Below, one piece after another: positions 50,309 through 51,477 of a stretch of DNA of 64,000 nucleotides. The translations under genes and the position numbers were made by a program. The notes under the pieces are model-generated. The model did not search any database. It was not told the DNA's origin and saw only the letters and a list, made by a program, of their open reading frames with translations. Each line of letters begins with the position of its first letter. Positions within the stretch are counted from its first letter, which is position 1. This stretch comes from Anolis carolinensis (taxonomy: Eukaryota), in contig NW_026943821.1 in assembly GCF_035594765.1 (NCBI RefSeq), positions 28,099,225 through 28,163,224 of the forward strand, written 5' to 3'.

Positions 50309-50391
50309 TTAGGAAGTATCTTTCAGCTCTGGACTTTGAGATGCTTGCAGGGGCACCTCCGTCGCCGGCGACTGCATTTCTTGGGACCTTT
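50309..50391 (-). CDS. PKI-family gene, last coding exon
   Basis: Strong acceptor (ct)n-tatccccatag| with matching phase; encodes an acidic, Ser/Gln/Pro-rich tail ending in TAA. Confidence 0.8.
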
Positions 50392-51470
50392 CTATGGGGA
50401 TAAGAGAGAGAGAGAGAGAGATGCAAGACGGTATCATCGACTGATGAGGGACTCAACACTTTCTGTGGCCTCAGATGACTACAGGCTTCAGGGAGAGCAC
50501 ATGAAACCGTTCTCTGGTTGATCTTTTCCCAGGAAATTGAGTCCTGGATCCATGTTATCTGGGAAAATAGAGTAGAGCAGGCGTGGGCAAACTGAGGCCC
50601 TGGGTGCTTACCTCAGGCCCTCCCCTAATTTTCCCTCTCCTCTTGGCATAAGGACGTGGTGGCTGGCTGTGCCTTTATGCTGAAATGATGGGGGAGGAAG
50701 ACACGCAGCCGCTGAGAGCCTTCAGGAGTGCTCTTGTGTTTCGTCCTCCTCCTGACATAAGGACAAGTGTGATCGGTCTCATCCTTATGTGGGGAGGACA
50801 GCTCAAGGAAGACATGCAGCAGTTGAGAGCCTTCTGGAGTGCTCTCAGCCACTGTGTATCTCGCCCTCCTCCTGACATAAAGACAAGTGTGAGTGGTCTC
50901 ATTCTTATACGGGGAGGACAGTTCAAGGGAGGCACATAGCATCTGAGAGCCTCTCAGCCACTGCATGTCTTGCCCTCCTCCCGGCATAAGGACAGTGCAC
51001 ACAGCCCATCCTTATGCGGAGAGGACAGCTCAAGGAAGGAACATGGTGGCTAAGAGCCCTCCAGGACGGTGAAGAAGCTTTGCATGATGGTGGTCATTTC
51101 AGGGCCTTGTTGAAATCTCCTGTCAGATCAGAAGACAGAGGCCGCAAAAGCCATCTCGGGGTGAAAAAGTTTTAATTTTTTCCTGGCTACTGATCTGCAT
51201 GCCATTGCTATGTAATGTTTGAACACACCATTCCCCATCCGAATAAAGGGAAGGAAGTTGAAGAGTTATACTGGTGGTGACCACCAATGGGAACAGGAAC
51301 CTAAGAGAAGACCGTTGTCCTCTACCTGAGTTTAGAGACATTTCTGCCAGTTTCAGTGGCAGGTCGGTCGGCCCAACACCCGCCGGCGAACCAAGGATGT
51401 CGGGCAAGGCATTCCTCCGGCCGGTGCGCCCCGAAGATGCAAAGTCCAGCACTGGCTCGACCTCCGTCAT
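50309..51470 (-). CDS. cAMP-dependent protein kinase inhibitor (PKI family), 75 aa; probable fourth paralog, closest in appearance to PKIB
   Basis: join(51470-51326, 50391-50309) gives MTEVEPVLDFASSGRTGRRNALPDILGSPAGVGPTDLPLKLAEMSLNSERSQEMQSPATEVPLQASQSPELKDTS*. It carries the PKI pseudosubstrate F..SGRTGRRNAL and an NES-like LPLKLAEMSL. Canonical splice sites, phase-1 intron, typical PKI length. Confidence 0.92.
50578..51065 (+). repeat. hAT-like fragment with degenerate internal repeats, PKI intron
   Basis: Starts caggcgtgggcaaact; repeated ctcctcctgacataaggacaagtgtg..tccttatg..ggaggacag units. Confidence 0.55.
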
Positions 51471-51477
51471 TTTCAGA
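51326..51477 (-). CDS. PKI-family gene, first coding exon (ATG at 51470; pseudosubstrate and NES)
   Basis: Acceptor ccttttcag|TCTGAAAATG and donor TCAG|gtagag; 48 codons plus 1 nt. Confidence 0.93.

What the first reader, a model, noticed from the sequence alone, without database searches (positions are those of the whole stretch)
50309..51477. A probable fourth vertebrate PKA-inhibitor (PKI) gene between FABP3 and SERINC2, absent from the human locus
Seen: two exons with canonical splice sites join into a 75-aa ORF with no stops or frameshifts. It holds the PKI pseudosubstrate (F10, R15, R18, R19, N20, A21, L22) and an export-signal-like LPLKLAEMSL at the position of the PKIA NES LALKLAGLDI. 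Established: mammals have three PKI genes. PKIB lies head-to-head with SERINC1 and upstream of FABP7 near NKAIN2; PKIG is head-to-head with SERINC3; PKIA is on the chromosome arm carrying FABP4/5 and NKAIN3. Human 1p35 (NKAIN1-FABP3-SERINC2) has no PKI gene that I know of. Inference: the order and orientation here (SERINC2 divergent from PKI, PKI co-directional with FABP3) match SERINC1-PKIB-FABP7, so this is likely the missing ohnolog from whole-genome duplication, kept in this lizard and lost on the human lineage. Automated pipelines may label it PKI-beta-like.
Basis: partly seen in the sequence, partly recalled or inferred. Interest (0 to 1): 0.93.

Follow-up and report, generated by a model that had tools for sequence, protein, structure and literature searches.

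The report
Fourth vertebrate PKA-inhibitor gene
This lizard gene is a real, spliced and strongly conserved fourth member of the protein kinase A inhibitor (PKI) family. It is found from sharks to birds, was not found in mammals, and databases label it PKI-beta or 'alpha-like'.

Summary
Confirmed and extended. The 75-aa ORF, splice sites, PKA pseudosubstrate and export-signal motif are there. Contigs from three studies show a spliced three-exon transcript with a non-coding exon at 53,164-53,443 and an acceptor at 51,516, not 51,477. The protein belongs to a clade spanning chimaera, sharks, bichir, teleosts, lungfish, amphibians, lizards, turtles and birds. The clade is one side of a 98/97 branch, apart from PKIB and PKIA. 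A recent lizard duplicate of PKIB is rejected (AU p=7e-7). A horned lizard carries both genes on different chromosomes. The order PKI, FABP3, ZCCHC17 holds in birds and sturgeon; true PKIB sits before a FABP7-type gene and SMPDL3A. The locus lies in the known four-fold chr1/6/8/20 paralogon (PMC2865548). No mammal appeared in the clade, but mammalian DNA was not searched, PKIG was not retrieved, and this genome's other PKI loci were not seen. Databases predict the gene under wrong or vague names; I found no paper naming a fourth PKI. The scan had not noted it before. Activity is inferred, not tested.

The parts
53164..53443 (-). Exon 1, non-coding (5' end at 53,443 or beyond); GTAAGT donor; three upstream ATGs whose frames stop inside the exon
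   Evidence: Spliced contigs X4 rec19, X8 rec26, X11 rec7; frames; exon and donor conserved in horned lizard
51517..53163 (-). Intron 1, GT-AG
51326..51516 (-). Exon 2: 46 nt of UTR, ATG at 51,470, codons 1-48 plus one base; a second AG at 51,478 (exon start 51,477) is used by a database model but not by the RNA contigs
51399..51458 (-). PKA inhibitor segment, residues 5-24: F10 (P-11), R15 (P-6), R18/R19 (P-3/P-2), A21 (P0, cannot be phosphorylated), L22 (P+1); Val instead of PKI-alpha Tyr7
   Evidence: Alignment to PKI-alpha peptides in the PDB; invariant columns in alignment A2
51333..51362 (-). Leucine-rich nuclear export signal, residues 37-46 (L37, L41, M44, L46)
   Evidence: Aligns with PKI-alpha 37-46; conserved hydrophobic pattern; predicted helix 37-51 in the ortholog model
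50392..51325 (-). Intron 2, phase 1, GT-AG; same position in shark, skate, sturgeon, teleost, bird and PKIB loci
50309..50391 (-). Coding part of exon 3: acidic, Ser/Pro-rich tail with a conserved Q-S/T-P at residues 55-57; stop codon
48800..50308 (-). 3' UTR of about 1.5 kb, interrupted by a repeat near 49,170-49,440; AATAAA at 48,825-48,830; RNA contigs end at 48,794-48,816
   Evidence: parts conserved in horned lizard
38209..44053 (-). Neighbour: FABP3 (heart-type), same strand, about 4.8 kb beyond the PKI 3' end
59356..64000 (+). Neighbour: SERINC gene (SERINC2 by gene order), divergent from the PKI gene
   Evidence: paralog name rests on order with NKAIN1, SNRNP40 and FABP3 (PMC5608768)
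21100..23653 (-). Context: NKAIN1-type exons, a marker of the chr1 arm of the paralogon

Best explanation
The gene is the fourth PKI paralog of jawed vertebrates, left by the early whole-genome duplications on the chromosome arm that carries NKAIN1, FABP3 and SERINC2 (human 1p35, chicken 23). It was kept under strong constraint from cartilaginous fish to birds and appears to have been lost in mammals. Most likely it works like the other PKIs. The small, largely disordered protein binds the free PKA catalytic subunit: R18-R19-N20-A21-L22 fills the active site as a site that cannot be phosphorylated, and F10 and R15 give high affinity. Binding exposes the leucine-rich signal at 37-46, which recruits CRM1 to carry the catalytic subunit out of the nucleus and end CREB signalling. 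It lacks Tyr7, as PKI-beta does, so a nanomolar rather than sub-nanomolar Ki is expected. SHOWN here: gene structure, splicing, conservation, separate clade, coexistence with PKIB and PKIA, gene order with FABP3. INFERRED: origin by genome duplication (from published paralogon data), PKA inhibition, export activity, affinity, loss in mammals.
For: Pfam PKI 69.6 bits. All key residues align with PKI-alpha and are invariant in 20 orthologs from chimaera to birds. Spliced contigs in three studies. Against horned lizard, exon 2 has 23 nucleotide and 0 amino-acid differences; against birds dN is about 0.05 with dS 1.3-2.5. Clade support 98/97; AU tests reject nesting with squamate PKIB (p=6.6e-7), therian PKIB (p=2e-4) and monotreme PKIB (p=0.012). 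Same-species pairs of this gene and PKIB: Phrynosoma, Hemicordylus, Crocodylus, Erpetoichthys, Scleropages, Megalops, Garra, Triplophysa. Pairs with PKIA: Mobula and Hypanus, on contigs of different size. PKI then FABP3 in 13 bird loci and sturgeon, with ZCCHC17 next in most. PKIB then a FABP then a metallophosphatase (SMPDL3A-type) in arowana. SERINC1/2/3 and NKAIN1-4 are published 2R families on these chromosomes (PMC2865548). Mechanism and Ki values of PKI-alpha, -beta and -gamma from PMC7723848.
Against: Only 76 alignment columns; deep forks are weak, and PKIB monophyly is 90/84 without outgroups but 32/72 with them. PKIG was not retrieved, and no cartilaginous-fish PKIB appeared among the listed hits. 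Shark, skate, filefish and horned-lizard loci had no neighbour gene within 10 kb, so shark synteny is unshown. SERINC2 was not found within 10 kb upstream in other species. Pro38 sits inside the export motif. No biochemical test. Absence in mammals is absence from truncated hit lists (best 120 of 183 and of 434; best 150 of 259).
Confidence: 0.85

Rival explanations
1. An old paralog, but from a local or segmental duplication of the PKIB block in early jawed vertebrates rather than from whole-genome duplication. The function would be the same; only the origin differs.
For: The gene is closer to non-mammalian PKIB than to PKIA (53% vs 48% over the full length). Short proteins cannot date the split. 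Shark synteny was not seen.
Against: The flanking families (SERINC, NKAIN, STMN) are published as 2R products on exactly these chromosomes. The same micro-order PKI then FABP is found at both loci. A catfish model fuses this gene to a stathmin (P0169), another paralogon family.
Confidence: 0.08
2. It is the lizard's PKIB (translocated, or a recent copy), as the database name for this species says.
For: UniProt/Ensembl entries for this exon are named PKI beta (P0009, P0427). PKIB of this very genome could not be looked up.
Against: AU p=6.6e-7 against grouping with squamate PKIB. The horned lizard has an identical exon-2 protein on CM034707 and a typical PKIB on CM034701 of the same assembly. 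The protein is 68-72% identical to chimaera and ray orthologs but 53% to lizard PKIB. The clade has a one-residue-shorter N-terminus.
Confidence: 0.02
3. The fourth paralog is real but was not lost in all mammals: monotremes or marsupials keep a diverged or unannotated copy.
For: No mammalian DNA was searched. A 75-aa two-exon ORF is easily missed by annotation. Mammalian PKIB is fast-evolving (47% between lizard and mouse), so a mammalian ortholog could rank below the listed hits.
Against: Every named mammalian PKI seen, platypus and echidna included, is PKIB-type. No mammal appears among the hits ranked above or among teleosts in the full-length profile search. Reviews list three isoforms.
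Confidence: 0.15
4. It binds PKA but is a poor exporter, acting mainly as a cytoplasmic or nuclear buffer, because Pro38 and Met44 weaken the export signal.
For: Pro38 is nearly invariant in the clade and PKI-alpha has Ala there.
Against: PKI-beta has the same Leu-Pro start and is described as having an export signal. The four hydrophobic anchors are conserved, and the model predicts a helix from residue 37.
Confidence: 0.15

Closest known systems
PKI-beta (PKIB, IPKB)
   Same: Pfam PF02827; pseudosubstrate without Tyr7; Leu-Pro start of the export signal; same phase-1 intron; FABP gene directly downstream on the same strand.
   Different: Separate clade (98/97); one residue shorter before F10; Ser/Pro-rich tail with Q-S/T-P at 55-57; next to FABP3 and ZCCHC17, not FABP7 and SMPDL3A; slower evolving; no mammalian member found.
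PKI-alpha (PKIA, IPKA)
   Same: 75 aa; F10, R15, R18, R19, A21 and the export signal at 37-46 line up exactly.
   Different: Val for Tyr7, Leu-Pro for Ile-His after the P0 site; 48% identity to ray PKIA; separate gene in the same rays.
PKI-gamma (PKIG)
   Same: Family member with inhibitor segment and export signal (PMC7723848).
   Different: PKI-gamma has Cys13; this protein has Ser13 in all aligned orthologs. PKIG sequences were not retrieved, so no tree test.
Database entries for this clade: si:ch211-255i3.4 (teleosts), 'PKI alpha-like', 'PKI beta-like', 'IPKA/IPKB inhibitor'
   Same: The same gene, already predicted by annotation pipelines in hundreds of non-mammals.
   Different: Names are inconsistent and often plain 'beta' (Xenopus tropicalis, Anolis, Varanus, many teleosts). 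The two Anolis models skip the last export-signal residue. No paper in the library mentions si:ch211-255i3.4 or a fourth PKI.
Opioid-receptor paralogon (human chr 1, 6, 8, 20; chicken chr 23, 3, 2, 20)
   Same: SERINC2 and NKAIN1, which flank this gene, are published members (PMC2865548).
   Different: The PKI family is not mentioned in that paper or its supplements.

Membership tests
PKI family (PF02827) | Profile match above the curated cut-off | tested here: met
   69.6 bits vs 25
PKI family (PF02827) | R-R-x-A-hydrophobic pseudosubstrate with Phe at P-11 and Arg at P-6 | tested here: met
PKI family (PF02827) | Leucine-rich export motif at residues 37-46 | tested here: met
   sequence pattern only
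PKI family (PF02827) | Small, mostly disordered protein | tested here: met
   75 aa; ortholog model pLDDT 64, one helix 37-51
PKI family (PF02827) | Nanomolar inhibition of PKA catalytic subunit; CRM1-dependent export | not testable with these tools
   needs kinase and export assays
PKIB ortholog | Nests with PKIB of the same lineage | tested here: not met
PKIB ortholog | Lies before FABP7 and SMPDL3A | tested here: not met
   lies before FABP3 and ZCCHC17; PKIB order seen
PKIA ortholog | Tyr7 and grouping with PKIA | tested here: not met
   Val7; separate branch; both genes in the same rays
PKIG ortholog | Cys13 in the inhibitor segment | tested here: not met
   Ser13 invariant
PKIG ortholog | Grouping with PKIG in a tree | not tested
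2R ohnolog | Present in both cartilaginous and bony vertebrates alongside its paralogs | tested here: met
   with PKIA in rays, with PKIB in bony vertebrates; shark PKIB not retrieved
2R ohnolog | Lies in a four-fold paralogon with duplicated neighbours | tested here: met
   window gene order plus PMC2865548 tables; FABP neighbour at both loci
2R ohnolog | Split dated by an invertebrate-chordate outgroup, topology matching neighbours | tested here: inconclusive
   insect outgroup and cyclostomes used; deep forks unresolved
Gene lost in mammals | No intact copy in the syntenic interval of monotremes, marsupials and placentals | not testable with these tools
   only absence from protein hit lists

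The most novel reading that the evidence does not exclude
This unnamed PKI is the most constrained member of the family in non-mammals and carries a regulatory input the mammalian PKIs lack: a Q-S/T-P site at 55-57 kept from chimaera to birds and also seen in a lamprey PKI, plus further Ser-Pro sites in the tail. These could let MAPK or CDK kinases control PKA inhibition or export. Its loss at the base of mammals would coincide with fast change in mammalian PKIB, so PKI biology in fish, frog and chick would differ from the mouse.
Probability: 0.15. Interest if true: 0.72.

Novelty: new member of a known kind. Interest (0 to 1): 0.5.

Why it matters
Reviews state that there are three PKI isoforms (PMC7723848, PMC6143667). 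For most vertebrates the count is four. The fourth gene completes the quartet expected from two genome duplications in a well-studied paralogon. In practice, zebrafish-type, Xenopus, chick and lizard entries for this gene are often named 'PKI beta', so knock-down, expression and orthology work in those models can target the wrong paralog or miss a redundant PKA inhibitor. It also offers a natural PKI variant, nearly unchanged for over 400 million years, for work on PKA binding and CRM1 export. It is not a new mechanism, and ohnologs lost in mammals are a familiar class.

Tried and rejected
Exon 2 was searched by reference, exon 3 was translated apart, and the horned-lizard ortholog P0001 (identical over exon 2) stood in for full-length searches and the fold. 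The N run at 53,674-53,808, just upstream of exon 1, was left unfilled. A human PKIB protein (P0335) came up; it was left out of all trees and its contigs were not fetched. N-terminal extension: rejected for this lizard, since the only in-frame upstream ATG stops inside exon 1. Acceptor at 51,477 and the shortened junction of the database models: not seen in the RNA contigs. Shared promoter with SERINC2: not supported, about 5.9 kb apart. SERINC2 in other species: no match within 10 kb upstream. Shark, skate, filefish, platypus-PKIB and horned-lizard loci: no neighbour genes within 10 kb. P0053 had no contig on record. PKIG: no sequence among those retrieved. P0173 checked as a possible mammal: it carries the iguanian-like G-P-T-D motif and is probably a squamate; organism unknown. 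Rfam: nothing between 44 and 64 kb. Ten literature searches found no fourth PKI; Dreborg 2008 was not held. Position counts for F10, R15, R18 and R19 are circular (they were in the filter), so one search is cited for those. Earlier scan notes held nothing on this gene.

Full report
Verdict. The window contains an intact, spliced, strongly conserved PKI-family gene that is not PKIA or PKIB and lacks the hallmark of PKIG. It is best read as the fourth paralog from the early vertebrate genome duplications. Its apparent loss in mammals is likely but was not tested on DNA.

The sequence. On the minus strand the ATG is at 51,470. The exon ends at 51,326 before a GT donor, giving 48 codons plus one base. 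The next exon starts at 50,391 after a pyrimidine tract and adds the rest of the split codon, 26 codons and a stop at 50,311-50,309. Exon 2 matches Pfam PKI at 69.6 bits against a cut-off of 25. It aligns with PKI-alpha over residues 1-47, including F10, R15, R18, R19, A21 and the export signal. The exon-3 peptide is identical to an Anolis carolinensis database entry (P0009), which points to an anole.

Transcription. Contigs from three separate studies each cover the exons in one or two records with continuous record coordinates (table 8). X4 record 19 covers 53,164-53,367, then 51,326-51,516, then 49,548-50,389. X8 record 26 has the same layout. X11 record 7 joins 53,164-53,443 to 51,326-51,516. 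The runs are only guessed to be RNA, but joins at GT-AG ends make spliced RNA the plain reading. Two letters are unlaid at the exon 2-3 join, which fits 50,391 plus a differing base at 50,390. An unspliced run (X12) shows that difference, and it turns the split codon from Glu to Asp, as in the horned lizard; that the RNA carries this base is my inference. Further contigs end at 48,794-48,816, just past an AATAAA at 48,830. Upstream ATGs in exon 1 all stop inside it. Tissue is not known. The two Anolis database models drop six residues at the exon 2-3 join, including the last export-signal anchor; the contigs do not support that.

Conservation. The exon-2 search gave 183 proteins; the best 120 are 83-100% identical and come from lizards, snakes, tuatara, crocodile, turtles, birds, amphibians, teleosts and sharks. 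A full-length profile added bichir, paddlefish, sturgeon and lungfish, and cluster look-ups added chimaera, skates and rays. No named hit is a mammal. Against the horned lizard, exon 2 differs at 23 bases and no residue. Against birds dN is about 0.05 and dS 1.3-2.5. The phase-1 intron sits at the same place in shark, sturgeon, teleost and bird loci. Exon 1, its donor and parts of the 3' UTR are conserved in the horned lizard.

Not PKIB, not PKIA. A PKIB profile search returned a different set of proteins, including mammals. Many species have both: Phrynosoma, Hemicordylus, Crocodylus, Erpetoichthys, Scleropages, Megalops, Garra, Triplophysa. In one Phrynosoma assembly this gene is on CM034707 and PKIB on CM034701. 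Mobula and Hypanus have this gene and PKIA as separate entries. In a jawed-vertebrate tree the clade is one side of a 98/97 branch; PKIB gets 90/84 and PKIA 100/99. AU tests reject joining the squamate copies with squamate PKIB (p=6.6e-7), and reject joining the amniote copies with therian (p=2e-4) or monotreme PKIB (p=0.012). The lizard protein is 68-73% identical to its chimaera, ray and bichir orthologs but 53% to lizard PKIB and 48% to ray PKIA. Limits: 76 columns, PKIA represented by rays only, no PKIG, no shark PKIB, human rows left out. With insects and cyclostomes added, the clade stays on a 95/97 branch together with four cyclostome rows, but deep forks are open.

Gene order. In the window: PUM1-type exons, NKAIN1, a WD40 gene, ZCCHC17, FABP3, this gene, SERINC2. 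Human 1p35.2 holds NKAIN1, SNRNP40, FABP3 and SERINC2 (PMC5608768; an OMIM-only list, so weak evidence on PKI). PKI followed by FABP3 on the same strand recurs in 13 bird loci and in sturgeon, with ZCCHC17 next on the other strand in most. Arowana PKIB is followed by a FABP and a metallophosphatase, the FABP7-SMPDL3A order known from human 6q22 (the human order is my own knowledge). PMC2865548 shows chicken chromosomes 2, 3, 20 and 23 as a four-fold paralogon from 2R, with SERINC2 and NKAIN1 on 23, SERINC1 and NKAIN2 on 3, SERINC3 and NKAIN4 on 20 and NKAIN3 on 2. It does not mention PKI. The three mammalian PKIs lie on human 8, 6 and 20 (own knowledge), so this gene fills the empty fourth slot. 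The SERINC side was seen only in this window, and cartilaginous-fish loci had no neighbour within 10 kb.

How it most likely works. By homology (PMC7723848; PMC6143667): after cAMP frees the PKA catalytic subunit, the protein binds it through the Arg-Arg-Asn-Ala-Leu pseudosubstrate, with F10 and R15 adding affinity. Binding unmasks the export signal at 37-46, and CRM1 returns the subunit to the cytoplasm. All anchor residues are invariant in 20 orthologs. A model of the horned-lizard ortholog is disordered apart from a helix at 37-51. Position 7 is Val, not Tyr; PKI-beta lacks Tyr7 and has a Ki of 7.1 nM against 0.2 nM for PKI-alpha, so a few nM is my prediction. None of this was assayed. A feature of the clade is a Ser/Pro-rich tail with Q-S/T-P at 55-57, also present in a lamprey PKI; phosphorylation there is speculation.

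Loss in mammals. The evidence is absence from three truncated hit lists and the fact that all named mammalian PKIs seen, including platypus and echidna, are PKIB-type. A diverged or unannotated monotreme or marsupial copy is not excluded; I put that at about 0.15.

Novelty and score. Annotation pipelines already predict the gene in hundreds of species, as 'alpha-like', 'beta-like', plain 'beta' or si:ch211-255i3.4. Ten literature searches found no description of a fourth PKI, though subscription journals are not covered, and gene-tree databases may already hold it as a separate clade. It is a new member of a known kind. It corrects a standard statement in a much-studied pathway and exposes mislabelled genes in fish, frog and bird models, but it brings no new mechanism. 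Interest 0.5.

Noticed in passing
window 59,150-59,157 and 59,224-59,231: Two perfect CRE palindromes (TGACGTCA), the only two in the window, lie 125-200 bp upstream of the SERINC2 start codon and about 5.7 kb from the PKI first exon. They may make SERINC2, or the PKI gene, respond to cAMP. None was seen within 10 kb upstream in bird or horned-lizard loci, which did not reach SERINC2.
   Followed up: partly
window 56,091-56,366; L024 185-459: A 279-bp non-coding element 80% identical in the horned lizard but inverted relative to the PKI gene. No Rfam match and no bird match; a candidate enhancer.
   Followed up: partly
window 50,390: The assembly base differs from that in run X12. The assembly gives Glu49, the other base gives Asp49 as in other lizards: a polymorphism or an assembly error.
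   Followed up: partly
window 53,324 and 53,280: Two upstream ATGs in the non-coding exon are kept in the horned lizard; short upstream ORFs could damp translation.
   Followed up: partly
window 53,674-53,808: An N run sits in the likely promoter just upstream of exon 1; both flanks are conserved in the horned lizard. Left unfilled.
   Followed up: no
L007/L008 398-679 (P0173): An unidentified, probably squamate copy in which the usual start is changed, a later Met could serve, and the inhibitor segment carries three substitutions; possibly a relaxed or shortened ortholog.
   Followed up: partly
proteins P0167 and P0169: Database models fuse this PKI's first coding exon to FABP3 (sterlet) and to a stathmin (catfish). 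They are probably annotation errors but mark the neighbours; stathmin suggests a rearranged teleost locus.
   Followed up: partly
proteins P0368, P0263, P0395, P0349: Mammalian PKIB, both therian and monotreme, sits on long branches: lizard to mouse 47%, lizard to bichir 73%. PKIB changed fast in mammals.
   Followed up: partly
proteins P0256, P0258, P0216, P0223, P0228: Cyclostomes seem to have several PKI genes. One lamprey type shares the Q-T-P tail motif of this clade; an unnamed Logan protein (P0228) groups with PKIA.
   Followed up: partly
proteins P0297 and P0321: Tenrec ecaudatus has two near-identical PKIB proteins on different chromosomes, probably a recent copy.
   Followed up: no
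window about 40,990-41,810: A run of about 123-bp tandem copies in the FABP3 region, each matching one site upstream of the horned-lizard PKI gene; a lizard repeat.
   Followed up: no
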